From contig NC_068985.1 of NCBI RefSeq assembly GCF_001194135.2, positions 25,159,548-25,210,176 of the forward strand: DNA of 50,629 nt, written 5' to 3'. Positions within the stretch are counted from its first letter, which is position 1; each line of letters starts with the position of its first letter. The stretch comes from Octopus bimaculoides. Its lineage: Eukaryota. Position numbers and translations under genes: made by a program. This document shows, piece by piece, positions 1,078 to 29,857 of the stretch. The notes under the pieces are model-generated. The model was given only the letters and a program-made list of their open reading frames with translations. It was not told the DNA's origin and ran no database searches.

Positions 1078-1131
1078 ACTCCGCTATGTCAAGATGGACT
1101 TATATATTCTTCCTCACATTTGGATTTTTAT
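1078..1131 (+). CDS. Otoancorin-like candidate exon (TPLCQDGLIYSSSHLDFY)
   Basis: catag|ACT...TAT|gtatgc, 54 nt, phase 0-0. The acceptor is weak and sits after a TA microsatellite. Confidence 0.45.
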
Positions 1132-4112
1132 GTATGCTCTCTCCCACTTGGATTTGATATGTTGCCACATTTATAATATGTCTTTTTTCTGCATTTTCGT
1201 GCAGCTGAAGATTGCTCTTCACATTGCATTTAAGGTAATGCTTGCATTACTTAAATAAATTGAAGTAGCATGAAACGTGCGTACTGCAATCACTTTTGAA
1301 ATCCGTGTTGCTTATTGTTTGATTTTAANNNNNNNNNNATATATATAGGAAGACCTGGGATGAGGTGGTGAAGCAAAACCTTCAAACATTTGGCCTCACG
1401 GAGGCGAGGACAAGTGACCAAGACCTTTGGAGATATGCTGTGCTTGAGAAGACCTGGCAAGCCAAGTGATACTGTAACTGGCCTATTCCAGTGCAGCATA
1501 ATCAGCCCATTGAAGAGTACCCTTCAATCATTGGGCAATAAACTGCGCTTGCAAAGACCTGTTGAGTCAAGTTAAGTCATTGTCATGGCCGATGACAGTA
1601 CTGCTTCTTAACAAATTTCTGAGTTAGGATGTCCCTAAATCTCTGACCATCATACACATTATATATATATATACATACATACACACATATACATACATAC
1701 AAGGGGGTGCTGAAAAGTTCCTAACTTTGAGTAAAAGAAAATATACGAGGATCAGTTAATTATGTGGAGGTGCATGGCTTAGTGGTTAAGGTGTTAGATT
1801 CAAGGATGTTAAATTGTGGTTTCAATCTCTGGACCGGACAGCACATTGTGTTCTTGAGCAAAACACTTCATTTCATGTTGCTCCAATCTACTCAGCTAAC
1901 TAAAAGGGGTAATCCTGCAATGGACCAGCATCCCATTCAGGTGGGGAATATATATGCCATGGAAACCAGGAAAACAGCCCTTGTTAGTGTACATGACTCA
2001 GGAAGGAATTTTGCTTGCTACAGGTAGTTATGATTTTATTCAACATATTCCCCTCTCAGATTCACACACTTATTGCAAAAGTCTTTCAGTTTTTCAGAAG
2101 GTTAGGTGTCCAACTAGGCCTTTCCCAGAACCCTTAAAACCAGGAAATTTCCAGGAGCCATCATATATACAAATTTACATTTGTTTGAAGCTAAAGCCTC
2201 ACAGTTTCACATTTTCTTATTTACTTTACCTATGTAATGTTTTTAAGGGATATGTAACCATCTGTAAGTTCATTTATTCATTGGCATTCTTCTTCAGAAT
2301 AAGAATAAAAAAGATTTCATCAAATTAGTACCACCAGGATTAATTAAAAAATCAGGAATGATGGTTATTAAAGAAATGTTTAATGAAGACACCAAACCTG
2401 AATTAATTCAGCTCTTCAAACCAAAGACTGAAACAGAGACAGTCACAAGAGCAACAAAGAAAGCAGAAAAAAAGAAAGTGTCTTTAGCAGAATTGGGGCT
2501 TGTAGACAAGGTATGTAAATACAACTTTATTTTCTAATTTATTGATATAATCTTTTAGCCATTTTAGCCATTAGTCTGCAGCCGTACTGTGTCACTCTTA
2601 ATTTCTATTAGATTATATTGATTATGGTATCCACCTGGCCCTTATTTTACGATCTTGTGGGGAATGAAAAGCATATCTTCCCTTTGGTATAAAGAGATGC
2701 AATTTGGCAGTGGGACAATAATGCAAGTGGTTAGGGTATTCAGCTCACAATCATAAGGTTATGAGTTCAATTCCCAGTGGCATGTTGTGTCTTTAAGTAA
2801 GATACTTTATTTCACATTGCTCTAGTTATCACTTGGCTGGCAAAAATGTGTTGTACTTGTAATTTAAAGGGCCAGCCTTGTTACATTCTGTGTCACGCTG
2901 TATCTCCCAGAGAACTATGTTAAGAATATGCATGTCTGTGGAGTGCTCAGCCACTTGCACATAACTATCATGAGCAGGCTGTTCCATTGATTGGGTTAAC
3001 TGGAACCCTTGACATCGTAACCAACTCTTCTTTATCTTTTTAATTGCAAGTAAATAATGGGTTACGAGCAAAAACAACATGCTGTCATTTAGTTCTTAAT
3101 GAAGGACAGGTTCTGGTAGCCCAACATCACAGAGTACTCTAAAAAATATGTTACTTGCATGCATTTAGAGTTAAGGCCAGTGACTAACACTGGCCAAATC
3201 AGTTCAGTGTACCTCACATTTAATGATGATTATAGTTTTCCTTTTTGGTAAAACATTGCAAACTGCACTCTGCATTAATTTTATATATGTGTGTGTGCGT
3301 GTGTATATTTATGTGTGTGTGTGTTTGTGTGTATGTGTGTATATATAGGCACAGGAGTGGCTGTGTGGATAGGTGCAGGAGTGGCTGTGTGGTAAGTAGC
3401 TTGCTTACCAGCCACATGGTTCTGGGTTCAGTCCCACTGTGTGGCACCTTGGGTAAGTGTCTTCTACTATCGCCTCGGGCCGACCAAAGCCTTGTGAGTG
3501 GATTTGGTAGACGGAAACTGAAAGAAGCCCATCGTATATATGTATATATATATGTNNNNNNNNNNNNNNNNNNNNNNNNNNNNNNNNNNNNNNNNNNNNN
3601 NNNNNNNNNNNNNNNNNNNNNNNNNNNNNNNNNNNNNNNNNNNNNNNNNNNNNNNNNNNNNNNNNNNNNNNNNNNNNNNNNNNNNNNNNNNNNNNNNNNN
3701 NNNNNNNNNNNNNNNNNNNNNNNNNNNNNNNNNNNNNNNNNNNNNNNNNNNNNNNNNNNNNNNNNNNNNNNNNNNNNNNNNNNNNNNNNNNNNNNNNNNN
3801 NNNNNNNNNNNNNNNNNNNNNNNNNNNNNNNNNNNNNNNNNNNNNNNNNNNNNNNNNNNNNNNNNNNNNNNNNNNNNNNNNNNNNNNNNNNNNNNNNNNN
3901 NNNNNNNNNNNNNNNNNNNNNNNNNNNNNNNNNNNNNNNNNNNNNNNNNNNNNNNNNNNNNNNNNNNNNNNNNNNNNNNNNNNNNNNNNNNNNNNNNNNN
4001 NNNNNNNNNNNNNNNNNNNNNNNNNNNNNNNNNNNNNNNNNNNNNNNNNNNNNNNNNNNNNNNNNNNNNNNNNNNNNNNNNNNNNNNNNNNNNNNNNNNN
4101 NNNNNNNNNNNN

Positions 4113-4146
<34 letters not shown>

Positions 4147-4629: not shown

Positions 4630-4663
<34 letters not shown>

Positions 4664-7600
4664 CTTTTATAAGGAATATTCTAAAAGAATATATAACTGA
4701 ACTTATATTGAGTGCTCTATTATTTTGAGCAAATATATATATATATGTATTTTTATATTATTAATAAATTCATAAAATTAACAATAATATTTGTAGGAAA
4801 TCAATATTTAATATTTCGAAAGATATATATCCGATATGACATGGTAAAATAATAAATTTAAAATTTAAAACATACGAAATATAAATATAAATATATGAAT
4901 GTAGATAAAGATACATGTGAATATAAATGCATATAAAAATTTATGCGTAATTAAGTATGAATATTATAAAGTCTAAAATTTTAAAAAATCTAAAATTTAA
5001 AGAATTAAACATCTATAATANNNNNNNNNNNNNNNNNNNNNNNNNNNNNNNNNNNNNNNNNNNNNNNNNNNNNNNNNNNNNNNNNNNNNNNNNNNNNNNN
5101 NNNNNNNNNNNNNNNNNNNNNNNNNNNNNNNNNNNNNNNNNNNNNNNNNNNNNNNNNNNNNNNNNNNNNNNNNNNNNNNNNNNNNNNNNNNNNNNNNNNN
5201 NNNNNNNNNNNNNNNNNNNNNNNNNNNNNNNNNNNNNNNNNNNNNNNNNNNNNNNNNNNNNNNNNNNNNNNNNNNNNNNNNNNNNNNNNNNNNNNNNNNN
5301 NNNNNNNNNNNNNNNNNNNNNNNNNNNNNNNNNNNNNNNNNNNNNNTATATATATATATATGTATATATATACACACACACACAAAATATATTTTCCTTT
5401 CCAGGTAATGGCAGATGAACCTGATGACAGCACAATGAACTTGGTCCTCCGTTCATCCCTCCTTGCTGTGATACCAGTAACGCAGCTTGATAAATTATCA
5501 GAAGATGTATTGTGTAACAAAGACATTGCAATAAGTGAATTAAAGCTGGATCAGGTAGGAATTTTATTCTTTGAGCCTATTTTGTTTCACTTTATTCATC
5601 TTTCAAAAATGATTTACCTGAATTTTGTATGTGTATATGAACACACAAGAGGCCAGTTACTGCAGTATTTGCCCTGGGATAATACTTTTTATGCACTTGC
5701 TATGTTAAAAACACAATAAATATCACAGAGGGATGAATATTCTAAATTGCCTTTATATTGCCAGCTACTCAACCATGAAAGAGGTATAGAATTGATTGTC
5801 AACTAAGCAAATTGAGAGAGTTGTTTGTTGCTAACGATCCACTGAGCAAACTCTTTGATATTTTCTGCTGAAATATTGGAGACAGGAGAACATTATTCAA
5901 TGTATTTTTTCGTTTTTTTAAAAATTTTTTTCTTTAAATAAGATTGCAGGATATAGCTTGAAGCAAATATTGCTGCTATTTCTAGGTGACTAAGGATCTA
6001 AGTTAATTGAAGTAAAGAGGGTGTTTGTTGCTTAATCCCAGGTCACAAAGCACTGCTAGAGAAGAAATTCTTCCTTTTGTTTACATTACTGAATGACTTC
6101 GTGTTACATTCTTTTCATTGAATTTATGTGATATAGTACAAAGATAGTTTCCTATTGCCTTTCCTTGTTTTTTTTTTTAATCATAACAGCAGAGTACCAT
6201 CATCATCATCATCATCATCATCATCGTCATCATCAGAATCATCACCGTTTAATGTTCATTTTCCATGTTGGCATGGGTTAAACAATTTGATGGGAGCTGA
6301 CCAACCAGGTTGCTACCCAGACTCCAACTGTCTGTTGTGGCATTTTTCTATGGCTAGATGTGCTTCCTAGGACACCTAACAAGGCAGCGAGCTGGCAGAA
6401 ACGTTAGCACGCCGAACGAAATGCTTAGCGGTATTTCGTCTGCCGCTACATTCTGAGTTCAAATTTCGCTGAGGTCGACTTTGCTTTCATCCTTTTGAGG
6501 GTCGATTGAAAAAGTACCAGTTATGCACTGGGGTTGATATAATCGACTTAATCCGTTTGTCTGTCCTTGTTTGTCCCCTCTGTGTGTAGCCCCTTGTGGG
6601 CAGTAAAGAAATTAGATGTCCTTCCTAATACCAGCCACTTTACAGAATGTGCTGGCTGCTTTTTAAATGCCACTGGCATGGGTGCATTTAGGCAGCAGAA
6701 GTATAAGTGAATTTTAAGTGGCACTGGCACCCATAAAGGGCAAGCCTATTGCTTTCAGAATTTTAGAAAAAGCCAGAAAGAAATGCTATAAAACATTTTA
6801 TCGAATGCTCCAACAATTCTGTCATTCTACTACATGACTTGGACTCGTACTTTACTTCATCAACCCCAGAAGGATGAAAAACAAAGTTGACCTCAGCAGG
6901 ATTTGGACTCAAAACCTTTATGTTCTGGATCAGAACAAATGTTAAAACAATTCTGCCAGTCTACAAACTTCAATGGGTACTTTACTTTATCAGCTTCAGA
7001 AGAATGAACGAAAAAAATTGGCCTCCATGGAATTTGAACTCAGAACATAAATGCCACAAGGCAACTATTCTGTCAATTAACCACCTTAGAACAGATATAT
7101 GTATGATCAAAGGACATTCCGGTCATGGCTATTTCATCTTATTTTCTGGAATAATGCCACCCAGATAATAATATCCCATGTGTCCTTTTATAGCAGCAGG
7201 GTACTGAGAAAGGTTTGACAGCTATTTCTAGCAGGTTGTGCAACAATGTAAAGTCTCTTTCGTTGGTTCACAGAGAAAACAGTCATTTGCTTTGCTTAGG
7301 TTTAAGAATCTTGATCATGGGGTCAGTAGTCAGGTTCCTTAATCTCTTTAGTGATTAATAAGCAGAGTCATTAGTGCATTGGTTGAAATACCATACAATA
7401 TTTATTCTGATCTCTTACGTTCAACCAGGACTTATGATAAGACTCAACATTTATGTTACCATATTTCTGCTGAAATACACTACCTTGGTTCCAATTAATT
7501 CCAAAAATAATGAAGAATTTAATAAACAGACTTTGCCATTATTAAGATGATGTTTAGAAAATTAATTGTGAAAATTTGATAAGTAGTTTAAATGTAGATG

Positions 7601-10600
7601 ACTTTAACCCTTTTGCATTTAAACTGGCTATGTCTGACCCAAATATTCTACCTGTTTTATGATCAAAATAGTCAGATCTGACCTCTCACACCTACTTGAC
7701 AATGTCATTCTTAAAATAAGCAATCACTTTATCAAAATCTCAAAGCTCTGATACAATGCATGGTTAGTTCAAAACTCCCTCTCTCAATCATACTCTATCT
7801 CAATGGGGCTGGGGTCATCCTAGGCTAGTAATCCAGGAGATGTCATAGTGTGTAAACCCTCATCGCTGGTGATCCAAAGCCAGCCTTTCCACATCCTTCA
7901 AAATGATGTTGAACCTCAGAAGATCTTCTTTAATTACGTCCAGCCAGGGTAGTCTGAATGCTAAATTGTTAAAACATGAAGTTTGTATCAGAGAAACATA
8001 GGCAGCCTCAGGTAGGCTGGTATCAAAAGGATTCATCCATCACTCAGAATAAGACCGCCACCAAATTTTTGAGTGCATTTGGCAGAATCTATTCTGTTGT
8101 CAGGGTTTCAGTTTCAGGCCAGGATTCCAGTTTCAGGATGCCTTCCTGTCTCTCCACTTCCCTTTCTTTCTCTCCAGCACCTTCCCTTCCACCTGTCTCA
8201 GAGACTCTGCAAAGGATTATGTTATCAGCAATTCTTATCCCTCTTGACTAAGCAATTAAGAAAAAAAGATAAATGACCATTCAATCTTTTATCTTTTACT
8301 TGTTCCTGTCATTGATCTGTGGCCATGCTGGGGCACTGCCTTGACAGATTTTCATAAACAAATTAACCCCAGTGCTTATTTTCAAGTCTGCTACTTATTC
8401 TGTCAACTTCTGTTGCTTAGGGATGTAAACAAATTAACAATGGTGTATGAATGTATATATACACATGTGTGTGATGGGCTTTCACACAGCTTTTGTTTAC
8501 CAAATTCACTCACAAGACGCTGGTCGACCATTTAAATAAACACTAACCTTTAAAAAATATCTTTCTCTCAAAACATTGTGTTCAATTTTTGTATGGCAGG
8601 CTCTGGCAATGAGTAAGAAGTGTTCCTCAATGGTAAAAGAGGTTCTCAAGACAGATCCAGATAAACTGGGTATCCTCACAACAAAAGTGACAAAAGAAAT
8701 GCTCAACGAGTTAGATGCAGACAAAACTTCTGAAGTGGTACAAGAAGCATGTAAATATGAACGTGATCTTAATATTGATGTGGTAAGTAGCTGAATTTAT
8801 TCTAGTATCTTTGAAACATATTTATTGACTTCTCTCATCGTTCTGTGTGTGTAATTGAATAAGAGAGACTGTTGTTGCTGTTGCCGCTGCTGCTGCTGCT
8901 GATGCTACTGTTTGGTTTTTAGCTCTGGGTCAGACCTGATCAAGCAGGTCTATCCTCAAAGGCATTTCATCTGTGATCATCTCATTTCTTTTCTTTTTAT
9001 TTAGACATAATGTTTGTAGAAACTACGTTATCCAATGTGTCTTTTTCTTTTAAGACTGTTAAGTGTGAATTGAGGGAATTTAACAATTGTTTCTTGCCAG
9101 TCAAACAATTGGTTTAATAAAACTTCCCTCTTCATATGTGTTGTTTGCTAATCACTTTAGCAAGGTTTATCTCTCCCCAAATTATGGACCAAAGCTCAAT
9201 TTACATGGTTGAAGCTAGCAATTTCACAAGAGGGACATACAGCTTTGGAAGTAAATTGGGAAGTTTCTAGGTTCGTATCTTTCTGAAAATGCATTGCTTT
9301 ATTACACATATGTGGCATAGTGGGTAACATACAAAAAGTGTGAGAGGACATTAGTGGATAATGTGCTAGGAGTGACGGAGGGGGTGACATCAGGTAAAAA
9401 AGCAAGTAATTTTAAAGTCCTTTTTTTACTCTTGTAATGGCTAGGAACTGATGGTTGTGATCAAGGAATCCTTGGAAATTCTGTCAACTGGCCAGAGTAT
9501 AGGGTTTATAAGGGTTACTCAATGAGCTCCAGTTGGGCTTTTGAGGAGTTTCCTTTTGGAGTTTTTTGCCAGTAGATACAAGATTCAGTTTCAACCAGGA
9601 ATTAAAATTTGGTCAATGATTTAATCAACCATATATTATCTTACAAAATTAAAATTAATAAAAAAAAAATGGCACAAGCATGATGATGGGTTACTTTGCA
9701 CAGACAGTATATTACTAAAGAAATGCCCTTGATATAAAGGTTAATTTCTCAAGTCATGCAGACTCGTAAGGGCCGGTTTCATGGTTTCAATGACGTATAA
9801 ATTCCCCACCTGGATGGGACACTGGTCTGTCATAGGATTACTCATTTTTGCCAGCTGAGTGGACTGGAGCAACATGAAATGAAGTGTATTGCTCAAGAAC
9901 ACAATGTGTCACCCAGTCCAGGAATTGAAACCACAATCTTATGATCATGAGTCCAACACCCTAACCACTAAACCACATACCTCCACAAATGCCCTTGATA
10001 TCATATTGAATGAACAACTGTAAGTGAGTGTAAAAAGATATAAAACTCAATATTTTGAGTTCTACTATTAACAGTACTTCATTTTTTTTTTCAGGCAAAA
10101 TTATTATTTTCTGTCTTAAAAGAGAAGAAAGTGAATGTAATCAAAGACAGTGATAAAGCTAGCTGCACAATAAAATATGCTATAAAGTGAGTTAATTTTG
10201 GCAAATTATTGATGTCTTAGTGTTTTTAGTGTTTTTTTTTTAATCTTAGGCCTGTTGGAACCAAGTTAGACCTCATCTAGCAGACCTTCTTTCTTTCTTG
10301 CCTTTAACCCTCCAACGCGGAGTATAGGCCGCTTATAATTGAATTCCATGTCGCATGATTTTTCACTTCTGTACTTATACTCTGCCATGAATGTCCCCCT
10401 TTCTCTAGTTCCTTTTGTGTTGATCTACGCCATGAGTTCTTAGGCCTACCTTTCTTTCTTTATCCATCCGGATTCCACTGTAAAGCACTTTTCACTACAT
10501 TTGGTGTGTCTTTTCTAATTGTGCTACCAATCCACTTCCACTATTTCTTAAATATTTGCTCCCTAATCGAAACTTGATTTGTTCTTTGCCATAGCTCCAT

Positions 10601-11079
10601 ATTGCTTATGTGTTCGGGCCATCTGATTTTAAGTATACTACGCAAGCACCTATGATTAAAAAAAAAAAAGTACAATAAGGTCTTTGCTTTGCTGAGAAAG
10701 TTTTAATAAGACTGGAATATGTCTGCATTTACATTTACCATCTGCACTTACTGGAATCATTGAAATAATATTTTTATTACAATATTGTTACATCTGCTTT
10801 GGGATTCTCTCATCATTACTCTAGCAAATGCAAGATTGTCTGTGCATCATTTAGGTCCAAACTGTCACAGGTGGTACAATTCCTCACTATAAACTTTGGC
10901 AATATTTTCTTTTACTTGTTTCAGTCACTGACCACAGGACTTATTCTTTGTAAGCCTAATACTTATTCTGTTGGTATCTTCTGTCAAACCTCTAAGTTAT
11001 GGAGATGTAAACACACCAACATCGGTTGTCAAGCGATGGAGGTGGGAACAAACACAGATACATACACACGAATATATAT

Positions 11080-11165
<86 letters not shown>

Positions 11166-15691: not shown

Positions 15692-15724
<33 letters not shown>

Positions 15725-18700: not shown

Positions 18701-21700
18701 GTTTTTGTTTGTTTTGCAAAATTCTTGATGTAAATCACATATTGTAACACTGTTGAACTTTGGAATGAATAGACTTCCAAGAAAAATTCACTGCTCCCTT
18801 CTACAGCAACTTTTCACAAAAAAAGGAAAACCATGGAAATCCACAGTAGTATTGTAAAAGGTTTTGATAAGATGAGCAATGTTTACTCAATTATACGGAA
18901 GTAAAGTACAACCAGTGTGTGTTTTTAATGGCAATATGACCTCCCCAAAGTAGAACATATTAGAAAAATGAAGTGGAAAAAATTATTTTTTAACTCAGGA
19001 ACATGTTTAGCAATTGAATTTCCATGATAAAGATCTCTTTAAATTCAGTGCTGCAGGACATTCCTCATCTATAAAATCTTTAATTTAAGTCTGTGTAGTT
19101 AAGAAGTTTGCTTCTCAACCACATGGTTTTGGGTTCAGTCCCTTTGTGCATAACCTTGAGCAAGTGTCTACTAGTCCTATGGACCACCAATGCCTTGCGA
19201 GTGAATTTGGTAAACAAGATCTTTGAGAAGCCCATTCCCTTTCTTCTTTTTTCTGTTTTCTTATTCTTTCCTTCCTTGCAAGTTACTTGGCAACGCACCA
19301 GTGATGGTGGCATGAAAGCTACATCCAGTATACCTAGTGTAAAGCAGGTGATGTTATGAAAGACATTCAGCTGTAGAAACCTTGTCAAAGCTGACATGGA
19401 GCAAGATGCAGGCCTGTAGCTAACTAGACCCTCTCAAACTGTCCAATCCATGCCAACATGGAAAATAGATGTTAAATGATGATGATGAGGATGATGATGA
19501 TGTGTATGTCTTTGTGTTTGTTCTTTCATCACTTGACAACTAGTGCTGGTTTGTGTATTTACCTTATGACTTGATGGTTTGACAAAAAAAGGAAAAAAAA
19601 AAGGGACCGATAGAAAAAATGCTAAACTTAAAGATAAGTGTTAGGGTTGATTTGTTTGTCTAACCATATAAGGCGGTGCTCCATCATGGCTGCAGTTCAA
19701 TGAGTGGAACAAGTAAATGGATGAAAGAGTAGATACCAGATAAGATTATAATTTTCCAGATTAATCACCTGTACCTTTGTAGCATATATTTATAATGTCT
19801 CTTTTATTCATTTGACTCTGCTGGGACATAGGACATTGAGAAGTGATCTCCATCTGTATTGATCTTTGGCAATGGATTGCAGTTGTCTGTAGGTGCTTCA
19901 GTGTCTTTGGACCTTCTCCATATTGTTTTTGGTCAGCTATGCTTCCATTTTCCTTGGGTGTCTGTTAGAGGAATTAACTTATAATGCTGGAAGCAGGTTT
20001 CCATAGGGTGCCAGTATGGAAAATAAATATTACATGATAATGATGATGACACAATGGGCTTCCATACAGTTTCCTTAGTCCAAATGTTACTCACAAATCA
20101 TTAGTCAACCCAGAGATATAATAGTAAACATTTGTCCAATATACAAAGAGGTGGTACTTCTTAATCACATAGTCATGTCTGCAGATGTATTATCTTAACA
20201 TTTATTTTAACTGTCTTTTCTACATGCGTAAATTTCTGGGATAAATTTTTCAATAATAATTAAAATTTTCTGAATGATTAATCCTGCCTTCTGTGTTTCA
20301 TAAATGGTTAACAATGTTGAAAGTTGCAATAATGGTCATAGGCTACCTTCATCAAAAATGATCTAAAATATAAAATCATAAAAAGATGATGTTAATAACT
20401 CACAAAATTTTTATTAATATACAGTAATTTTTTTCTTTTTTTTTCCAATTCTAGGCCCTAGGTTCACCCAAATCTACAAAATGGTCTGAATCCGATTTGA
20501 AATCTGTGGTTCCTGCAATACCAGGTCTGTCAGTTGATGAAATTGGCAGCTTAGATCTCAACACATTGGATCTTGCTTTTGCTTTAGGAAATCAAATCAC
20601 CTGGAATTCTGATAAGGTAAAGATATTTGTTTTATCATTATTTGCAGAAAGCTCACAAGCTGGCAGAATTGTTAAGAGTTTCAAAAAAGCCCACAAGGGT
20701 TGATATAGTAACATACCAGCTTCCTTCTTTCACCCAGCTTGTTTAGGAGCTACAATGTTGTTGGTGGTACAATGATCCTGTAGAAACAAGTTGAAGCTGC
20801 TAGTGAACATATACATGATGTTTTGACAGATTATTGGAGAGTAATTTTTAGTTTTCATGGTTTGGCTATTTTGGGGACTGAGAAGGGTGATGGGTGTTGA
20901 CAGCCATGTGAGTACATTTAACATACCCTTGATATTCTTCCCATACAATGTTGCTAAATCACACAGATAAAAGTTAAGATATTTTACTCAATATCCTGTA
21001 ATGAGATCTGGACCAGAAGATTTCCTGTTTGGTATCTTCTTTTCAAGACTGTTTCTAGCCTTTTAGATTATTCTGTCAAATGTAATACTTATTCATTTAT
21101 ATTGCTTTGAATTAATCATGCATTATCTTGCAGTTATGAGATCTTCATGATGTGATTGCTTATTTTTAGAAGGACACTGCATGGTAGGTGTGAGAGGCTG
21201 CATCTAGCTGGTTTGAACACAAAACAAGTAGAATATTTAGGCCAGATGTGGCTGGTTTGAATACTAAAGGGCTAGTATAAAGTATTTGTCCAGGGATTGA
21301 TATGGGAATGGACCTGACACTATATTTAGGAAATGCAGGCATAAATAGGTGCTTATGTGTGTTTATGTATATGTGTGTTTATGTATTATAAATGCAACCA
21401 TTATCATGACTTGTTTCTCTTTGCAGTTGAAAGCAACGTTTGATGTGCTTTATAAAAAGTTACTGAACTCCAGCAACAGTCTTATCACCAGCCTTGAACT
21501 ACAAACATTTCGTAATCTGCTTTGTGGCATGAACACTAATATTATTCAATCAATAAAATCTGAGGAATATTCGTAAGTTGCATCAACTTTATTTCCTTTA
21601 GAAACACACACACACACCATATATTTGTTTATTATGAAGGCATGTGTCTTAGTGGTTAGGGTATTCAGCTGACGATCGTAAGGTTGTGAGTTCAATTCCT

Positions 21701-24105: not shown

Positions 24106-24145
<40 letters not shown>

Positions 24146-24167
24146 NNNNNNNNNNTTGGGGGGACAA

Positions 24168-24218
<51 letters not shown>

Positions 24219-27200
24219 AATCCACTCACAAGGCTTTGGTCGGCCCGAGGCTATAGTAGAAGACACTTACCCAAGGTGCCACACAGTGGGACTGAACCAG
24301 GAACCATGTGGTTGGTAAGCAAGCTACTTACCTATAGTTGGATATCTGCATAAAATTAATAAGTGCCTATAGACAAGGATTTAATCTTAAGTGAACTAAA
24401 AAACAAAACCCCACTCTCCAGCAATAAAAATGGTATTTGAAAATATTGTTGATATAAGAATCTCATGTTCATGTGATATTTCCATGCTTTTATATCTGCT
24501 TCCAGAACTGCAGCTCGAGAACTTGGAAACATTGACTGTTTTACAAATGAGCAGCACAAACTTTGGGTCCAAAAAGCCAAAGATGTATACCAAGATGTTG
24601 ACAAGTGGTCAGATTCAATAATTGCAAGCATGGGAGCTGTGATTAGTAAGTAATAGTAACATATGCTTGTTGTTTTGTTAGATTTGGATATATAAAACAT
24701 CTCTTCAAAGACTTACATTAAAAAACCAATAAACAGTATTGCAGGAGAAATACCTAGCTAAGGATAAACCTCTGTACCTGGCTTTCGTTGACATGGAGAA
24801 AGCCTTTGACAGGGTCCCCCGATCCCTTATCTGGTGGTCAATGAGGAAACTTGGGATAGAAGAATGGTTAGTGAGAGCTGTGCGAGCCATGTACAGAGAT
24901 GCTGCCAGTAAGGTGAGGGTTGGAAATGAGTACAGCAATGAATTCCGGGTAGAGGTAGGGGTCCACCAAGGTTCCGTCCTCAGACCCCTCTTATTTATCA
25001 TAGTCCTCCAGGCAATCACAGAGGAGTTCAAGACAGGTTGCCCCTGGGAGCTCCTCTATGCTGATGACCTTGCCCTAATTGCGGAGTCACTATCANNNNN
25101 NNNNNNNNNNNNNNNNNNNNNNNNNNNNNNNNNNNNNNNNNNNNNNNNNNNNNNNNNNNNNNNNNNNNNNNNNNNNNNNNNNNNNNNNNNNNNNNNNNNN
25201 NNNNNNNNNNNNNNNNNNNNNNNNNNNNNNNNNNNNNNNNNNNNNNNNNNNNNNNNNNNNNNNNNNNNNNNNNNNNNNNNNNNNNNNNNNNNNNNNNNNN
25301 NNNNNNNNNNNNNNNNNNNNNNNNNNNNNNNNNNNNNNNNNNNNNNNNNNNNNNNNNNNNNNNNNNNNNNNNNNNNNNNNNNNNNNNNNNNNNNNNNNNN
25401 NNNNNNNNNNNNNNNNNNNNNNNNNNNNNNNNNNNNNNNNNNNNNNNNNNNNNNNNNNNNNNNNNNNNNNNNNNNNNNNNNNNNNNNNNNNNNNNNNNNN
25501 NNNNNNNNNNNNNNNNNNNNNNNNNNNNNNNNNNNNNNNNNNNNNNNNNNNNNNNNNNNNNNNNNNNNNNNNNNNNNNNNNNNNNNNNNNNNNNNNNNNN
25601 NNNNNNNNNNNNNNNNNNNNNNNNNNNNNNNNNNNNNNNNNNNNNNNNNNNNNNNNNNNNNNNNNNNNNNNNNNNNNNNNNNNNNNNNNNNNNNNNNNNN
25701 NNNNNNNNNNNNNNNNNNNNNNNNNNNNNNNNNNNNNNNNNNNNNNNNNNNNNNNNNNNNNNNNNNNNNNNNNNNNNNNNNNNNNNNNNNNNNNNNNNNN
25801 NNNNNNNNNNNNNNNNNNNNNNNNNNNNNNNNNNNNNNNNNNNNNNNNNNNNNNNNNNNNNNNNNNNNNNNNNNNNNNNNNNNNNNNNNNNNNNNNNNNN
25901 NNNNNNNNNNNNNNNNNNNNNNNNNNNNNNNNNNNNNNNNNNNNNNNNNNNNNNNNNNNNNNNNNNNNNNNNNNNNNNNNNNNNNNNNNNNNNNNNNNNN
26001 NNNNNNNNNNNNNNNNNNNNNNNNNNNNNNNNNNNNNNNNNNNNNNNNNNNNNNNNNNNNNNNNNNCACATGAGATGCACCATTTTGAGCGTGGCCGTTG
26101 CCAGTACCGCCTGACTGGCTCCCGTAGGATTTTCGAGTGAGATCGTTGCCAGTGCCCCTGGACTGGCTTGTGCAGGTGGCACATAAAAGACACCATTTCG
26201 AGCGTGGCTGTTTTCGTGCGAGTGACACGTAAAAGCACCCACTACACTCTCTGAGTGGTTGGCGTTAGGAAGGGTATCCAGCTGTAGAAACTCTGCCAAA
26301 TTAGATTGGAGCCTGGTGTTGCCATCCGGTTTCACCAGTCCTCAGTCAAATCATCCAACCCATGCTAGCATGGAAAGTGGACGTTAAACGATGATGATGA
26401 TTATGATAATCATAATCAATCAGTCTTGATGTTCTAAACCTTTTGATACTAAACTGCTCTTGTTCTTATTGTATAGACTCCTTGTTTTAAAGTGAACTAA
26501 AAATATCCAATCAAAATTTCATGTTAATTTGTTCCAAACATCAGCTTCAAAGTGACTATGTTATTTCACTATATTCATTATTTTTAAATTTTATTGAAAG
26601 AAAAACAATGTACTTCTATAGAAATATGGTAATAGGATTAAGGTAAGGAAAAATGAGGTAACTAAGTGTTTTTCCAAAGTGAGACTTAGTTTATCCATAA
26701 CTTACCTGTCACAGCAATGATACAATACATTAACATTTAAAATGAAGTTCTGACATTTCTTAGTCTTTCCTACAGTTGGTTAAAGTTATTCAAATGGGAA
26801 TTAAATATAAAAATCAAGATGAAAAGAATGTGTGTGTATTGATGAAGTCCAACCCAAATCTAATCAAGCAAACTTATGAAAGGCATTCTGGTCATGAATG
26901 TAGATTTCTCAAGTTATATAGAATTACATTCTCTAATGTATCCTTTATTTTAAAACATTAGAGAACTATCTGAAAGTGCTGAACAACCATTAAGAGGCTT
27001 CCAAATGTAGTGTTGTTTCAACCAAACCTATAATCATTGCACATTCCATCCTATTTTTTTTACAATGTGTAGAACCAATTTACCCTATCCCTCATTTGTG
27101 ATTTAGTCCTCATTGTATGCATTCTACTTCTTGGTCTACTTGTCATAAAATCTCAACTATACAATGGTCTTTTACTTGCTTCAGTCATTAGATGGCATCC

Positions 27201-29857
27201 ATGCTGAGACACCACCTCCAAGAACTTTTAGTGGAATGGATCAGACCCAGTACTTATTCTATCAGTCACTTTTGCTGAACTGGGGCACAAACACACCAAC
27301 ACTTGTTGTCAAGTGGTGATGGGGGACAAACACACAAAGATAGTGTCCATCTACCAAATCCGCTTACATGGCTTTGGTTGACCTGAGTCTGTAGTAGAAG
27401 ACACTTTCCCAAGGTCCAATGCAGTGGGGCTGAATCCAGAACCACGTGGTTAGGAAGCAAGCTTCTTAACACACGTGGATCTCTTCTCACCATAAAATGT
27501 AAATTATGAAATATATGTTGAGAATACCTTTAAGAGGAAAATGGGCAGAGCATATCATTTCTGTACCTAAGAAGTGGCTGTAACATTCATATCAATATGC
27601 AAATAGTTTGCAAAAGAATGCTTTGCAATGCTGAAAACTTTAGAAAAGATATAAATAACAAGAGAGATGAGAATGGATGCAATACAAGCTTAGGGTTGAA
27701 GTACATGGTGGTTAAATGCTTTCGTATATGATTGATATTAACTGAGTATCCCATCGCGCATTTTGTGGTGCAAATATGGCTATGTCTTTACAACCATGTG
27801 ATCCTTGCTGGATTCTGCTATGCAGCACCAACCAAACCCTTTTGTAATTTGGTAGACAGAAACTGTCTGGAAGCCTGCTCATGATCTTAGGGTCAGGAGT
27901 TCAATTACTGACAGCAAGGCACTTTATCTCCCTTTGCTCCAGTCCTCACAACTAGCAAAAATGAGTACCTGTATTTCAAAGGGTCAGCCCTCATCATCAT
28001 CGTTTAACGTCCACCTTCCATGCTAGCATGGGTTAGATGATATGACTGAGGACTGGTGAAACTGGATGGCAACACCAGGCTCCAATCTGATTTGGCAGTT
28101 TCTACAGCTGGATGCTTGTTAATTTCACAAGCAAGTCATTCCGTTACTTGGATCAATTGGAAATCTCATTCTCATAACCAACAGAGTGCCAGCATGTAGA
28201 CATACACACTGACACATAGTTGTCTTTCACTGAAGGCTACAACCATTGGCAAGAAATTAAAACGCCAGTGATATTATGTTGACTCTTGCCACAAGAAATA
28301 CTGCCAACTACTGAATGGCTTAATGGAAACCTGAAACCAGAACTATTGCTCTCTAATTCCAACAAAAGAAAAATCTATGTTGCTTTTTCCATCAAATATG
28401 TAGAGGGTGGTTTACTGTAAGCTTTTGAGAAAATAATCAAGCTAATGCATGCAATACATTTCAGGTGGTTTATCAGCAGAAGATTTACAGAAGCTGACAT
28501 CAACACAAATCACTGCAATACTTCCAGACACAATACCAAAGATTGCAGCTGAATCTCTGAAGGTAACAGTTCACCATTTTTACAAGTTTGCGACATAGTA
28601 GGCTACTGTGACCTGTAAATGGTTCACTCACTTGGGAAACAGACGAGCCTAGTATAATTGTCTTGCAATACAAACTACACAATTCTTGCATTATAACTGG
28701 CCCTTGCACATTCTCTGTAGTTTCAGCCATCAGTATTAGGGCTTCCTATACTTTCTGATATGGCAGACAACTCAAAGTGTCTGCTATATCCTTCACTCAG
28801 TCCAGCATGGAAACTTTCAATGAGAAACAAAGATAAAGTGTCTGTGAGCCATGTATTTACCTTTTAAACAAATATTTGAAAGTTGTCAAAAGACAATAAT
28901 GCAAGTTCTATCACTCTTCACAAATTTTAAATCAGTGGAAATTACAACATACTACTAAGAAAATACAAATAGACTCTTGCAATGCCTACTCAATGTAGGC
29001 CTAGGTACTCTACGTCTCATAACATATTGCATTCATGTTTAACTGTGCTTTTCATTTTTTCCCTTCTTTTCAAGAACTTTCATCCACACCAGTTCAACTA
29101 TCTGACAACATCCCAAGTTCAGAAAATAACTGCAGCACAAAGCTCCGAATTAAACAGTGAACAAATAGATATCATTAAAGAAAAACTGAAATACATCAAT
29201 AGCTTACCGGAGAAAAACAATAGTGATGGTAACTATACAATTTGATTTTTAACAAACAAGCCCAGATTATTATTTTATTTTGATAGGGATTAGAAATCCT
29301 AACTAAAAGCTGTCAACACAAGCCATTAATTTTCTGATAATACCCAATTTAACAATGATTAACAACATTAATCCTTTAGCATTCAAACAGGGCCATATCA
29401 GGCTCAAAATATTCTGCCTGTATTATGCTCAAACTGTCCCTCTCACACGCACCCTACCATGTCAGTCTAAAAACAAACTCATCAAAATCTCAAAAAAGAT
29501 AATGCATAATTAATTCAAAACAATGTGAATGAATAAGCATTACATTCAACAGATTGCTAAAGGGTTATTGACATTTTCATTGTCTAAGGAAAAATATTTG
29601 AAATTAAAACATGCTTAATAGACTAATGAAATTTATGTAACAAAATTTCTTTGTAAATCTTCACTTCAAATGTTTTTATAAATGTTGTTTAAAAAGGTAC
29701 CATACTTTTAGCATTAAGGCCATTACCATTTGAAAACATGCTTCTATGATAAACTTTAGACCAATACAATTTTTTTGTCCATTTTTCTTCAGGATCTCGC
29801 AGCAATTTGAACGTCGCAGTTTTAATCTTCAGTATCCTGTTGCTCATTCTATATTAA
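1078..29857 (+). CDS. OTOA: Otoancorin-like (otoancorin/stereocilin/mesothelin family) GPI-anchored protein; multi-exon gene, 5' end not found in window
   Basis: 17 exons joined by GT-AG with consistent phases give an open frame of 750 aa (722 aa from 2298). The C-terminal half (EKAKVALGSPKSTKWSESDL...LDLNTLDLAFALGNQITW...NLLCGM...LGNIDC...KAKDVYQDVDKWSDSIIASMGAVISGLSAEDL) matches the repeat pattern I recall for vertebrate otoancorin; no search was run. Ends in a hydrophobic tail NVAVLIFSILLLILY*. The symbol means family resemblance, not proven orthology. Confidence 0.85.
1205..1234 (+). CDS. Otoancorin-like candidate exon (LKIALHIAFK)
   Basis: ttttcgtgcag|CTG...AAG|gtaatg, 30 nt, phase 0-0. 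Confidence 0.6.
1346..1590 (+). mobile_element. RTE-type LINE ORF2 C-terminus and start of 3'UTR
   Basis: Translates RKTWDEVVKQNLQTFGLTEARTSDQDLWRYAVLEKTWQAK*, a typical RTE C-terminal pattern. Confidence 0.7.
1698..2165. mobile_element. Mariner-type non-autonomous element with nested SINE (about 1764-2025)
   Basis: Imperfect TIRs: tacaagggggtgctgaaaagttcct and aggaaatttccaggagccatcata; related to the TIR at 46491. Confidence 0.6.
2298..2510 (+). CDS. Otoancorin-like exon (NKNKKDFIKL...ELGLVDK)
   Basis: ttcttcag|...|gtatgt, 213 nt open, phase 0-0. Confidence 0.8.
2710..3030 (+). mobile_element. tRNA-derived SINE (second family)
   Basis: A-box-like agtggttagg and B-box-like gagttcaattccc; similar copies at about 21640-21935 (+) and 9760-9975 (-). 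Confidence 0.75.
3346..3545 (+). mobile_element. tRNA-derived SINE (ggagtggctgtgtggtaag family), cut by a gap
   Basis: tggctgtgtgg A-box and gggttcagtccc B-box; the first about 21 nt are duplicated. Confidence 0.8.
3556..4112. other. Assembly gap (N-run)
   Basis: Other gaps at 1329-1337, 5021-5346, 15759-15768, 24146-24155 and 25096-26067. Confidence 1.
5405..5554 (+). CDS. Otoancorin-like exon (VMADEPDD...SELKLDQ)
   Basis: tttccag|...|gtagga, 150 nt, phase 0-0. Confidence 0.85.
6382..6612 (+). mobile_element. SINE (ggcagcgagctggcagaa family) nested in an RTE-tail repeat
   Basis: tRNA-like head with gagttcaaatt; flanked by tagatgtgcttccta (6355-6369) and tagatgtccttccta (6613-6627). Confidence 0.8.
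7604..7972. mobile_element. TTAA-flanked MITE (piggyBac-like termini)
   Basis: ttaacccttttgcattt...tctgaatgctaaattgttaa. Confidence 0.6.
8600..8782 (+). CDS. Otoancorin-like exon (ALAMSKKC...RDLNIDV)
   Basis: ggcag|...|gtaagt, 183 nt, phase 0-0. Confidence 0.85.
10095..10186 (+). CDS. Otoancorin-like exon (AKLLFSVLKE...KYAI)
   Basis: tttttcag|...|gtgagt, 92 nt, phase 0-2. Confidence 0.85.
10287..10651 (-). mobile_element. RTE-clade LINE 3' fragment, copy 1
   Basis: Reverse strand reads RCLRSILKIRWPEHISNMELWQRT...WNPDG*RKKGRPKNSWRR with stops; (AAAG)n-like tail. Confidence 0.85.
10910..11240 (-). mobile_element. SINE (same family as 13571) with internal (TA)n
   Basis: Reverse complement of the family body and tail. 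Confidence 0.7.
11761..11890 (+). CDS. Otoancorin-like exon (EIKDLDVK...RNLCFE)
   Basis: attttcag|...|gtaaga, 130 nt, phase 2-0. Confidence 0.85.
12737..12918 (+). CDS. Otoancorin-like exon (LVVDKELS...RLKKID)
   Basis: tttttag|...|gtaaaa, 182 nt, phase 0-2. Confidence 0.85.
13270..13360 (+). CDS. Otoancorin-like exon (LSNPVTL...DIDKIPK)
   Basis: tttaacag|...|gtaagt, 91 nt, phase 2-0. Confidence 0.85.
13571..13957 (+). mobile_element. Near full-length tRNA-derived SINE
   Basis: A and B boxes, internal (TG)n and gtaaaaga tail; matches the copy at 37961-38335. Confidence 0.85.
15045..15234 (+). CDS. Otoancorin-like exon carrying KRRRRRRS polybasic site
   Basis: tttacag|...|gtaata, 190 nt, phase 0-1; TNLESASLLL...KQAKRRRRRRSTT. 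Confidence 0.85.
16886..17252 (-). mobile_element. RTE-clade LINE 3' fragment, copy 2
   Basis: Closely similar to 10287-10651, with the same 5' boundary (agcacct) and a poly(A) tail. Confidence 0.85.
17390..17618. mobile_element. TTAA-flanked MITE
   Basis: ttaaccctttagtattcaaa...tttaaataccaaagggttaa. Confidence 0.75.
18485..18657 (+). CDS. Otoancorin-like exon (CDCELPSQLG...AEKAKV)
   Basis: ttgcag|...|gtgagt, 173 nt, phase 1-0. Confidence 0.88.
20455..20616 (+). CDS. Otoancorin-like exon (ALGSPKSTKW...TWNSDK)
   Basis: ttctag|...|gtaaag, 162 nt, phase 0-0. Confidence 0.88.
21427..21572 (+). CDS. Otoancorin-like exon (LKATFDVL...NLLCGM...SEEY)
   Basis: tttgcag|...|gtaagt, 146 nt, phase 0-2. 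Confidence 0.88.
22185..22480 (+). mobile_element. RTE 3'UTR/tail repeat ending in (GAT)n
   Basis: Same sequence as 26068-26400 (+), 40935-41215 (-) and 50475-50607 (-). Confidence 0.8.
22705..22867. mobile_element. TTAA-flanked MITE, 163 bp
   Basis: TTAA-ccctttagcattta...tgaatgctaaaggg-TTAA. Confidence 0.85.
24506..24645 (+). CDS. Otoancorin-like exon (TAARELGNIDC...SMGAVI)
   Basis: cttccag|...|gtaagt, 140 nt, phase 2-1; this frame is missed by the ORF track. Confidence 0.88.
24739..26400 (+). mobile_element. 5'-truncated RTE-clade LINE: reverse transcriptase fragment, gap, then 3'UTR with (GAT)n tail
   Basis: Uninterrupted frame LYLAFVDMEKAFDRVP...GVHQGSVLRPLLF...ELLYADDLALI at 24739-25095; Ns at 25096-26067; tail at 26068-26400. 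Confidence 0.9.
28465..28562 (+). CDS. Otoancorin-like exon (GLSAEDLQKL...AAESLK)
   Basis: atttcag|...|gtaaca, 98 nt, phase 1-0. Confidence 0.88.
29075..29228 (+). CDS. Otoancorin-like exon (NFHPHQF...EKNNSD)
   Basis: ttttcaag|...|gtaact, 154 nt, phase 0-1. Confidence 0.85.
29368..29568. mobile_element. TTAA-flanked MITE (degenerate)
   Basis: ttaatcctttagcattcaaa...gattgctaaagggttat. Confidence 0.7.
29793..29857 (+). CDS. Otoancorin-like last coding exon, GPI-type signal (GSRSNLNVAVLIFSILLLILY*)
   Basis: ttcttcag| acceptor, TAA at 29855-29857; small residues (N-S-D-G-S) precede a terminal hydrophobic stretch. Confidence 0.85.

What the first reader, a model, noticed from the sequence alone, without database searches (positions are those of the whole stretch)
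1078..29857. Invertebrate otoancorin/stereocilin-family GPI-anchored protein: candidate hair-cell anchoring component
Seen: a phase-consistent 17-exon frame with a GPI-type tail and repeated LG/LC..W helical motifs. Established: vertebrate otoancorin and stereocilin link hair-cell epithelia or bundles to acellular gels, and cephalopods have statocyst and epidermal-line hair cells. Inference: this protein may attach cupula or statolith matrix to cephalopod hair cells, or serve another apical adhesion role. The N-terminal half looks much more diverged than the C-terminal half.
Basis: partly seen in the sequence, partly recalled or inferred. Interest (0 to 1): 0.7.

Follow-up and report, generated by a model that had tools for sequence, protein, structure and literature searches.

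The report
Otoancorin/stereocilin/mesothelin-family GPI-anchored protein gene
The window holds an intact multi-exon gene for a cell-surface protein of the same family as the vertebrate ear proteins otoancorin and stereocilin and the tumour antigen mesothelin. The family assignment is solid, but nothing here shows that the protein works in hair cells.

Summary
I recover 15 plus-strand exons (2298-29857). All have canonical AG/GT splice sites and matching phases. They show strong codon periodicity, overlap no repeats, and end in a GPI-type tail with the stop codon at 29855-29857. All six assembly gaps lie in introns. For the three gaps in the C-terminal half, alignment to homologues is continuous across the junctions.

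The family assignment is strongly supported:
- A profile of 19 published MSLN/MPFL/OTOA/STRC sequences scores 86 bits (E about 1e-28). The best of 2000 shuffles scores 12.9 bits.
- hhalign gives 97.4% probability.
- Pfam Stereocilin hits at E = 1e-6.
- Three cysteines are invariant.

The protein is most similar to otoancorin (25-28% identity) but branches at the centre of the family tree. It is therefore a family-level relative, not an otoancorin orthologue. A KRRRRRR site sits where mesothelin is cut by furin. The N-terminal half has no detectable relatives.

The hair-cell role is untested. Reported invertebrate "otoancorins" are expressed in testes or found in skeletal matrix. This is a new member of a known family, of modest interest.

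The parts
2298..2510 (+). Exon 1 of the model (aa 1-71, phase 0/0). First confident exon, not the true 5' end.
   Evidence: Acceptor ttcttcttcag, donor gtatgt. Purine at codon position 1 = 0.76. No repeat overlap.
5405..5554 (+). Exon 2 (aa 72-121, phase 0/0). Starts 59 nt after the gap at 5021-5346.
   Evidence: Acceptor tttcctttccag, donor gtagga.
8600..8782 (+). Exon 3 (aa 122-182, phase 0/0).
10095..10186 (+). Exon 4 (aa 183-213, phase 0/2).
   Evidence: Acceptor tttttttttcag, donor gtgagt.
11761..11890 (+). Exon 5 (aa 213-256, phase 1/0).
12737..12918 (+). Exon 6 (aa 257-317, phase 0/2). Contains an LSxxQL-type motif (VSDIKKLDDEQLLEAAQ).
   Evidence: On its own it gives a faint Pfam Stereocilin match, E = 0.065, profile positions 188-222.
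13270..13360 (+). Exon 7 (aa 317-347, phase 1/0). Last exon of the part with no detectable relatives.
   Evidence: Acceptor score 5.6, donor gtaagt score 7.7.
15045..15234 (+). Exon 8 (aa 348-411, phase 0/1). The family-homologous region starts here (aa 388 onward; envelope from aa 351).
   Evidence: V391 is invariant in alignment A2, which supports the weaker donor at 15234 over the in-phase alternative at 15129.
15204..15224 (+). Polybasic site KRRRRRR (aa 401-407): candidate furin/proprotein-convertase cleavage site, 5 residues before the first conserved cysteine.
   Evidence: It is the only R-x-K/R-R match in the protein. It aligns to the linker where human mesothelin has RPRFRR|EVEKTAC and mouse MPFL has RPKRRIGRSC. 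Cleavage itself is inferred.
18485..18657 (+). Exon 9 (aa 411-468, phase 2/0). Cysteine-rich start of the C-terminal domain (ACDCELPS...EMLC...LTC).
   Evidence: C412 is invariant across the window protein, OTOA and STRC.
20455..20616 (+). Exon 10 (aa 469-522, phase 0/0). Main part of repeat unit A (KAK...W...GLSVDEIGSLDL).
21427..21572 (+). Exon 11 (aa 523-571, phase 0/2). Contains the conserved LCG motif (C555) and SEEY, which aligns with SEF in OTOA.
24506..24645 (+). Exon 12 (aa 571-618, phase 1/1). Conserved C582; repeat unit B (KAK..W..MGAVISG, which aligns with LGTIAAG).
28465..28562 (+). Exon 13 (aa 618-650, phase 2/0). GLSAEDLQKL segment.
   Evidence: Aligns to PDB-verified mesothelin residues 499-555 (GGAPTEDLKAL...), z = 5.0, 0 of 1000 shuffles. 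Best Pfam Stereocilin stretch.
29093..29228 (+). Exon 14 (aa 651-696, phase 0/1). An alternative in-frame acceptor at 29075 would add NFHPHQ.
   Evidence: The 29093 form gives the longer Pfam alignment.
29793..29857 (+). Exon 15 (aa 696-716 plus stop TAA at 29855-29857). Hydrophobic end of the GPI-type signal.
   Evidence: Acceptor score 7.1. VAVLIFSILLLILY is the most hydrophobic 15-residue region and the protein ends there.
29216..29854 (+). GPI-attachment-type signal (aa 692-716, split by the last intron): small residues S-D-G as candidate attachment (omega) site, spacer SRSNLN, 14-residue hydrophobic end, no cytoplasmic residues.
   Evidence: Rule-based reading of the sequence. No trained GPI predictor was available.
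1094..1234 (+). Candidate (unproven) first coding exon: ATG at 1094 or 1178, donor gtaatg at 1234, phase 0, hydrophobic peptide.
   Evidence: The coding score is negative and there is no homology or transcript support.

Best explanation
Positions 2298-29857 (+) hold an intact gene for a secreted, membrane-tethered protein of at least 716 residues. Its C-terminal ~330 residues belong to the stereocilin/otoancorin/mesothelin superfamily.

Shown:
- The C-terminal domain (aa ~388-716) is homologous and co-linear with the conserved C-terminal region of OTOA, STRC, MPFL and mature mesothelin, including three invariant cysteines.
- It contains an internal repeat.
- It ends in a GPI-type signal.

Inferred:
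- The protein enters the secretory pathway through a signal peptide encoded by a 5' exon that I have not identified.
- A furin-type convertase cuts it at KRRRRRR|S (aa 401-407), the position where the mesothelin precursor is cut. This would release or loosely retain a lineage-specific N-terminal fragment rich in Lys/Glu/Leu, and leave a ~300-residue C-terminal domain on a GPI anchor in the outer leaflet of the apical membrane.
- By homology with solved mesothelin structures, that domain is a disulfide-stabilised alpha-helical solenoid.
- As in its vertebrate relatives, it would bind a glycoprotein or gel-like apical extracellular matrix and tie it to the cell surface.

The tissue, and hence the matrix, is unknown. 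In evolutionary terms the protein is a co-orthologue of the whole vertebrate family. It is closest in sequence to otoancorin and shares the mesothelin/MPFL-type precursor layout.
For: Gene model: canonical splice sites and matching phases at 14 of 14 junctions; codon periodicity exceeds all 1000 resamples of other ORFs; no repeat overlap.

Family:
- An HMM built from the 19-sequence published alignment scores 86.0 bits, E = 1.4e-28, matching HMM positions 226-452 to aa 388-619. The reversed sequence scores 1.3 bits and the best of 2000 shuffles scores 12.9.
- hhalign against 11 vertebrate sequences gives probability 97.4%, E = 9.7e-12, over 186 columns.
- Pfam PF21058 Stereocilin scores 28.6 bits, E = 1e-6, above the gathering score of 26.6. 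Reversed and shuffled controls give no hit.
- C412, C555 and C582 are invariant with OTOA and STRC.
- A profile of the window protein plus OTOA and STRC finds mesothelin as the top three PDB hits (best E = 0.0053).
- The C-terminal 80 residues align to PDB-verified mesothelin residues 499-555 with z = 5.0.

Placement: sub-family HMM scores are OTOA 53.2, STRC 13.1 and MSLN/MPFL 6.7 bits. Identity in the core is 25-28% to OTOA, 20-22% to STRC and 15-18% to MSLN. In a neighbour-joining tree the protein joins at the central node in 88 of 100 bootstraps.

Processing: there is a single polybasic site, in the mesothelin furin-linker position. The family is known to be furin-processed (MSLN) and GPI-anchored (PMC2628672). 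The GPI-type tail is shown.
Against: - No start codon or signal peptide was found in the window. Secretion and GPI anchoring both need one.
- No transcript evidence was available. Exons 1-7 rest only on splice sites, phases and periodicity, and they have no detectable relative.
- Furin cleavage and GPI attachment are read from the sequence only.
- The fold could not be predicted, because the structure tool refuses spliced sequences.
- The vertebrate sequences I used are machine-read from a PDF and carry OCR errors. The Xenopus block looks partly copied from the chicken block.
- Direct phmmer of the window protein against PDB, and the Pfam Mesothelin model, give no hit.
- Two gaps between exons 1 and 2 could hide an exon.
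Confidence: 0.75

Rival explanations
1. One reading: the protein is the cephalopod counterpart of otoancorin or stereocilin in function. It would be made by statocyst or epidermal-line hair cells or their supporting cells and would anchor the cupula or statolith matrix to them.
For: The protein belongs to the family and is closest in sequence to otoancorin. It has a GPI-type tail like OTOA and STRC. Vertebrate OTOA and STRC tether acellular gels to ear epithelia (PMC2628672).
Against: No expression data could be consulted. The protein is not an OTOA or STRC orthologue but branches before their split, so ear-specific roles may be vertebrate innovations. The other vertebrate members (MSLN, MPFL) are not ear proteins. 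Invertebrate 'otoancorins' studied so far are in tunicate testes, are testis-upregulated in a starfish where the protein is also in the secreted set, and occur in octocoral sclerite matrix. No paper in the library links the family to cephalopods.
Confidence: 0.12
2. Same molecule and same tethering mechanism, but working elsewhere: in the gonad or gametes (as in tunicate and starfish), or in another apical or secreted matrix such as cuticle, sucker lining, mucus layer or biomineral matrix.
For: The Botryllus otoancorin homologue is up 54-fold in fertile colonies and was located by FISH to testes (PMC4523013). Starfish otoancorin is among known secreted proteins and is upregulated in testes (PMC9759900). 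An otoancorin-like protein is in the octocoral sclerite organic matrix (bioRxiv 2020.07.15.202069). Human OTOA is also classed as a cancer/testis gene (quoted).
Against: Those proteins were named by BLAST and their relation to this gene is untested. There are no data for this species.
Confidence: 0.45
3. Two genes, or a wrongly joined model: exons 1-7 (no detectable relatives) belong to a separate upstream gene, and only exons 8-15 form the family member.
For: The N-terminal half scores 0.0 bits against the family N-part, has no Pfam family, and is not similar to the C-terminal half (z = 0.78).
Against: Exon 7 has no stop codon and ends in the strongest donor of the gene (score 7.7), in phase with the strong acceptor of exon 8 (6.1). 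No ATG-initiated exon sits between them in the best chain. All family members carry a long N-terminal part before this domain. The polybasic linker makes sense only if something precedes it.
Confidence: 0.07
4. A decaying or unexpressed pseudogene, or an assembly artefact.
For: Six assembly gaps lie in the locus. The 5' end was not found. There is no transcript evidence.
Against: 2151 nt of reading frame are intact across 15 exons. All splice sites are canonical, codon periodicity is strong, and cysteines and motifs are conserved.
Confidence: 0.04

Closest known systems
Otoancorin (OTOA), vertebrate inner-ear GPI-anchored protein
   Same: Highest similarity: the OTOA-only HMM scores 53.2 bits and identity is 25-28% over ~200 residues. 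Shared motifs include LC(A/G)..., SE(F/Y), C, KA(E/K), W and (L/M)G(T/A)(I/V)(A/I)(A/S)G, and the cysteines are conserved. Both end in a GPI-type signal.
   Different: The window protein is not inside the OTOA clade. OTOA is ~1150 residues with two family units and the homologous region begins at residue 570, whereas the window protein has at least 716 residues with one detectable unit. OTOA has no polybasic site in the linker. The N-terminal halves are unrelated at detectable level.
Mesothelin precursor (MSLN: MPF + mesothelin) and MPFL/MSLNL
   Same: Same layout: an N-terminal part, then a polybasic furin-type site a few residues before the first conserved Cys, then a ~300-residue domain, then a GPI signal. 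The alignment to PDB-verified mature mesothelin is co-linear. Mesothelin is the top PDB hit of the profile built from the window protein, OTOA and STRC.
   Different: The sequence is very distant: 15-18% identity, 6.7 bits for the MSLN/MPFL HMM, and no Pfam PF06060 hit.
Stereocilin (STRC)
   Same: Pfam PF21058 Stereocilin is the only significant Pfam family. Identity to the STRC region 1194-1666 is 20-22%, and the LCG and IG..AAG-type motifs are conserved.
   Different: STRC is 1775 residues with three units. The STRC-only HMM gives just 13.1 bits. PF21058 does not cover the STRC region used in the published alignment, so the Pfam hit is to another STRC unit.
Invertebrate 'otoancorin' homologues (Botryllus, Acanthaster, octocoral)
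   Same: They are non-vertebrate members of the family as named by homology, and they are secreted or matrix-associated.
   Different: The reported sites (testes, sclerite matrix) are not mechanosensory.

Membership tests
Stereocilin/otoancorin/mesothelin superfamily (Sathyanarayana et al. 2009, PMC2628672) | Significant profile similarity to the conserved region shared by MSLN, MPFL, OTOA and STRC | tested here: met
   HMM of 19 members scores 86 bits, E = 1.4e-28; shuffles reach at most 12.9 bits. hhalign gives 97.4%, E = 9.7e-12.
Stereocilin/otoancorin/mesothelin superfamily (Sathyanarayana et al. 2009, PMC2628672) | Conserved cysteines of the C-terminal domain | tested here: met
   C412, C555 and C582 are invariant in A2. 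The four cysteines of mature mesothelin align at or within one residue of four of the six cysteines in the window protein's C-terminal half.
Stereocilin/otoancorin/mesothelin superfamily (Sathyanarayana et al. 2009, PMC2628672) | C-terminal GPI-attachment signal | tested here: met
   S-D-G, a 6-residue spacer and a 14-residue hydrophobic C-terminus with nothing after it. This is a rule-based reading, not a trained predictor.
Stereocilin/otoancorin/mesothelin superfamily (Sathyanarayana et al. 2009, PMC2628672) | N-terminal signal peptide | tested here: inconclusive
   Only weak candidates exist upstream of exon 1. The true first exon may lie elsewhere or outside the window.
Stereocilin/otoancorin/mesothelin superfamily (Sathyanarayana et al. 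2009, PMC2628672) | All-alpha ARM-type superhelical fold | not testable with these tools
   Structure prediction and the search of protein representatives refuse spliced sequences. The fold is inferred only through homology to solved mesothelin.
Pfam PF21058 Stereocilin | Whole-protein score above the gathering score of 26.6 bits | tested here: met
   28.6 bits, E = 1e-6 with the 29093 acceptor. The C-terminal half alone scores 25.2 or 23.8 bits, just below. Reversed and shuffled controls are negative.
Otoancorin orthologue | Branches inside the OTOA clade | tested here: not met
   In the neighbour-joining tree it joins at the node between MSLN/MPFL and OTOA+STRC in 88 of 100 bootstraps, and with OTOA alone in 9 of 100.
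Otoancorin orthologue | Expression at the apical surface of ear or mechanosensory epithelia, contacting an acellular gel | not testable with these tools
   No expression data were available, and no literature exists for cephalopods.
Mesothelin (Pfam PF06060) | Match to the Mesothelin profile | tested here: not met
   No PF06060 hit even at E <= 10. Human MSLN scores 1204 bits and mouse MPFL 121 bits against the same profile.
Mesothelin (Pfam PF06060) | Furin-type cleavage site between the N-terminal fragment and the GPI-anchored domain | tested here: met
   KRRRRRR|STTAC aligns to RPRFRR|EVEKTAC. Only the motif is shown; cleavage itself was not tested.

The most novel reading that the evidence does not exclude
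The gene encodes the protein that fastens the cupula or statolith gel to hair cells in cephalopod statocysts and epidermal lines. If so, the attachment of hair cells to an overlying gel would use the same protein family in molluscs and vertebrates. That would point either to deep homology of the attachment or to repeated recruitment of one family, and a single pre-duplication gene with a mesothelin-like precursor layout would be doing the job.
Probability: 0.12. Interest if true: 0.7.

Novelty: new member of a known kind. Interest (0 to 1): 0.3.

Why it matters
- It gives a well-supported protostome member of a family best known from human deafness genes (OTOA, STRC) and a cancer antigen (MSLN). 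The exon map is usable for cloning or probe design.
- The mix of otoancorin-like sequence with a mesothelin/MPFL-like polybasic linker and one family unit suggests that the furin-cut, GPI-anchored precursor is the ancestral layout. The long multi-unit OTOA and STRC would then be derived.
- It offers a concrete candidate to test whether invertebrate hair cells use this family to hold their accessory gels. As it stands, though, that is only a hypothesis.

Tried and rejected
- **Large protein database (search for homologous proteins).** I queried it with the concatenated exons, with the C-terminal half (E <= 10), and with a profile of the window protein plus OTOA and STRC. All three returned nothing. 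The last search did not even recover vertebrate OTOA or STRC, so that collection evidently lacks these animal proteins. The null results say nothing about how widespread the gene is.
- **The search of protein representatives and structure prediction.** Both refuse spliced proteins. I ran no further search on one 57-71-residue exon, because that library derives from the same collection.
- **Single-exon Pfam scans.** Uninformative.
- **phmmer of the model against PDB.** No mesothelin hit.
- **N-terminal half.** It is not similar to the family N-part, to the MSLN N-part, or to its own C-terminal half.
- **ORF 12124-12270.** It looked coding by eye but has no usable splice sites and is not needed for phase, so I dropped it.
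- **Small extra exons.** My exon-chaining program proposed several at low penalty (14690-14719, 16098-16160, 16284-16295, 16373-16387, 28296-28406, 28727-28843). They vanish at a modest per-exon penalty, and in the C-terminal half they would break the co-linear homology.
- **Initial exon 1875-1940.** It lies inside a repeat and was rejected.
- **Rfam and tRNA scans of the window.** Nothing found.
- **Source organism.** It could not be verified.

Full report
**The window.** It is 50,629 bases at 35% G+C, with six N runs at the stated positions. It is rich in microsatellites and interspersed repeats. It looks like an AT-rich animal genome.

**Gene model.** Stop-free stretches that look like coding sequence lie on the + strand between 2.3 and 29.9 kb. 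I scored splice sites with simple position weight matrices and chained candidate exons by dynamic programming. With a moderate per-exon penalty the chain settles on 15 exons, from 2298-2510 to 29793-29857.
- Every acceptor has a pyrimidine tract followed by AG, and every donor is GT (most are gtaag or gtgag).
- Phases match at all 14 junctions.
- The codon table was trained on these same stretches, so I ran an independent test. The chi-square of base against codon position is 0.152 per codon for the 2151-nt coding sequence, against 0.027 +/- 0.014 (maximum 0.091) for pooled other ORFs of the window. None of 1000 resamples reaches it. Exons 1-7 and exons 8-15 are each positive, at 0.229 and 0.101.
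- No exon overlaps a repeat detected by self-BLAST. The 'initial exon' my program picked (1875-1940) lies entirely in a repeat and is spurious.

**Gaps.** All six N runs fall in introns or upstream of exon 1, so no reading frame has to cross unread sequence.
- For the gaps at 15759, 24146 and 25096-26066, the flanking exons join at aa 410/411, 570/571 and 617/618. The alignments to OTOA, STRC and mesothelin run straight through these points. No exon is hidden there.
- For the two gaps between exons 1 and 2 there is no homology guide. A hidden exon whose length is a multiple of three cannot be excluded.

**5' end.** Exon 1 starts at a good acceptor in phase 0, so at least one exon lies upstream. 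Three candidates exist:
- ATG 1094 or ATG 1178 up to the donor at 1234 (phase 0). The peptides are hydrophobic but the coding score is negative.
- A more signal-peptide-like ORF, MSRWTYIFFLTFGFLCMLSPTWI*, at 1086-1154. It has no usable donor.

I do not confirm '17 exons' or the start.

**The protein (716 residues as modelled).**
- It is rich in Leu, Lys, Ser, Glu, Ile and Asp, and poor in Gly and Pro.
- It has 14 cysteines and three N-glycosylation sequons.
- It has one polybasic site, KRRRRRR (aa 401-407).
- Its only strongly hydrophobic segment is at the very end: ...EKNNSDGSRSNLNVAVLIFSILLLILY. Small residues (S-D-G), a six-residue polar spacer, a 14-residue hydrophobic end and nothing after it make up the classic GPI-signal layout.
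- All five tryptophans lie in the C-terminal half, each a few residues after an LG or LC.
- Two units (aa 455-501 and 583-628) are clear repeats of one another (z = 7.2).

**Family assignment, first attempts.**
- Single exons gave nothing in Pfam.
- The spliced protein hits PF21058 Stereocilin at 28.6 bits, E = 1e-6, against a gathering score of 26.6. Reversed and shuffled copies give no hit.
- The large protein database returned nothing.
- phmmer against PDB did not reach mesothelin.
- I wrote out human mesothelin from memory and checked it. Residues 296-600 match PDB 7UED chain M at all but one of 305 positions, and the whole sequence scores 1204 bits on Pfam Mesothelin.
- A Smith-Waterman alignment of the window protein's C-terminal half to mature mesothelin is co-linear over about 280 residues (z = 3.2). 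Cross-controls between halves are flat. The last 80 residues align with z = 5.0.

**Family assignment, decisive step.** Additional file 1 of Sathyanarayana et al. 2009 (PMC2628672) is held as text. It gives the conserved regions of 19 MSLN, MPFL, OTOA and STRC sequences. The text is machine-read and has some OCR errors.
- I re-aligned these sequences and built an HMM. It scores the window protein at 86.0 bits (E = 1.4e-28 for one target), matching HMM positions 226-452 to aa 388-619. The reversed sequence scores 1.3 bits and the best of 2000 shuffles scores 12.9.
- The tool's own hhalign, using 11 of the vertebrate sequences, gives probability 97.4%, E = 9.7e-12, over 186 columns.
- Motifs line up: KAK...W, LS..E(L/I)..LDL, LCG, SE(F/Y), C, and MGAVISG against LGTIAAG. 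C412, C555 and C582 are invariant with OTOA and STRC.
- A profile of the window protein plus OTOA and STRC, with no mesothelin in it, finds mesothelin chains as the three best hits in the whole PDB (best E = 0.0053). This ties the domain to a solved helical-solenoid fold.

**Position in the family.**
- Sub-family HMM scores are 53.2 bits (OTOA), 13.1 (STRC) and 6.7 (MSLN/MPFL).
- Identity in the ~200-residue core is 25-28%, 20-22% and 15-21% respectively.
- A neighbour-joining tree nevertheless puts the window protein at the central node, between MSLN/MPFL and OTOA+STRC, in 88 of 100 bootstraps. It groups with OTOA alone in only 9 of 100.
- The simplest reading is a single invertebrate gene related to the whole vertebrate family. 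OTOA would simply be the slowest-evolving vertebrate copy.

**The polybasic site.** It sits in the linker just before the first conserved cysteine. This is exactly where human mesothelin has RPRFRR|EVEKTAC and mouse MPFL has RPKRRIGRSC. OTOA and STRC have no such site there. An alternative in-phase donor at 15129 would skip this segment, but V391 within it is invariant across the alignment. I therefore keep the segment in the model.

**N-terminal half (aa 1-387).**
- It scores 0.0 bits against the N-part of the family profile, and 514 of 2000 shuffles do as well.
- It has no Pfam family.
- It is not similar to the C-terminal half.

Its link to exon 8 rests on the strong, phase-matched donor and acceptor pair at 13360/15045.

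**Mechanism.**
- Shown: family membership of the C-terminal domain, the internal repeat, the conserved cysteines, the GPI-type tail and the polybasic motif.
- Inferred from the family (PMC2628672): secretion, convertase cleavage into an N-terminal fragment plus a GPI-anchored ~300-residue helical solenoid, and binding of a glycoprotein matrix at the cell surface.

**Function in hair cells.** This cannot be tested here. The library holds no paper linking stereocilin to cephalopods, and the only paper holding both 'otoancorin' and 'cephalopod' (or 'mollus...') is the starfish study. Where invertebrate 'otoancorins' were examined:
- In the tunicate Botryllus the gene is expressed in testes (FISH; 54-fold up in fertile colonies).
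- In a starfish it is among known secreted proteins and is upregulated in testes.
- In an octocoral the protein is part of the sclerite organic matrix.

Stereocilin was not detected in a sponge transcriptome. These points lower the prior for a role specific to mechanosensory cells. They also show that invertebrate members of the family are already on record.

**Verdict.** This is a real, apparently intact gene and a new member of a known family. It has an informative mix of otoancorin-like sequence and mesothelin-like precursor layout. The hair-cell part remains a hypothesis with a low prior. Interest is modest.

Noticed in passing
window 32799-37437, minus strand: A second gene downstream, on the opposite strand. 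One exon carries Lys/Thr/Pro-rich TPAKTPK repeats (36943-37437). Several others carry pieces of RNA-recognition motifs: LFVKQL at 35345-35497, YAFVEF at 35031-35273, LYITGF at 34258-34434. By eye it looks nucleolin-like. Pfam gives RRM_1 at E = 9e-4 for one exon.
   Followed up: partly
window 13569-13955, with further copies at 3368-3553, 11249-11455, 24215-24332, 37961-38329 and elsewhere, both strands: A short interspersed repeat family with up to ~10 copies in the window. All copies lie in introns or between genes. No tRNA-like or Rfam match was found.
   Followed up: partly
window 10287-10651 and 16888-17252: A 365-bp duplicated element in two introns. Its minus strand encodes a peptide (…RGRPKNSWRRSTQKELEKGGHSWQSI…) that by eye resembles the C-terminal end of a non-LTR retrotransposon ORF2. 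A similar fragment on the + strand sits at 1329-1466, next to the first gap. Pfam gives no hit.
   Followed up: partly
window 46568-46870, minus strand: An ORF with HPPYVSDLVPSGYHLFPNIEKH…, which by eye looks like the C-terminal part of a mariner/Tc1-type transposase. No Pfam hit at E <= 0.01.
   Followed up: partly
window 49246-49959, plus strand: The longest open frame in the window (238 aa), with a Ser/Asn-rich stretch. It has no Pfam family and its nature is unknown.
   Followed up: partly
window 1086-1154, plus strand: A short ORF, MSRWTYIFFLTFGFLCMLSPTWI*, that looks like a good signal peptide. It ends in a stop and has no usable splice donor in phase with exon 1. It lies about 170 nt before a 10-N gap of unknown true size, so a missing piece of a real first exon cannot be excluded.
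   Followed up: partly
window 15683-15770 and 24066-24250: The two 10-N gaps inside introns are flanked by TG/TA microsatellites. This pattern fits contig joins at simple repeats rather than lost unique sequence.
   Followed up: no
not in the window: the conserved regions of OTOA (570-1020) and STRC (1194-1666) taken from PMC2628672: Neither region matches any Pfam-A family at E <= 0.01, and PF21058 'Stereocilin' does not cover this STRC region. The most conserved part of the family therefore seems to have no Pfam model outside PF06060 Mesothelin. This explains why the window protein is barely picked up by Pfam.
   Followed up: partly
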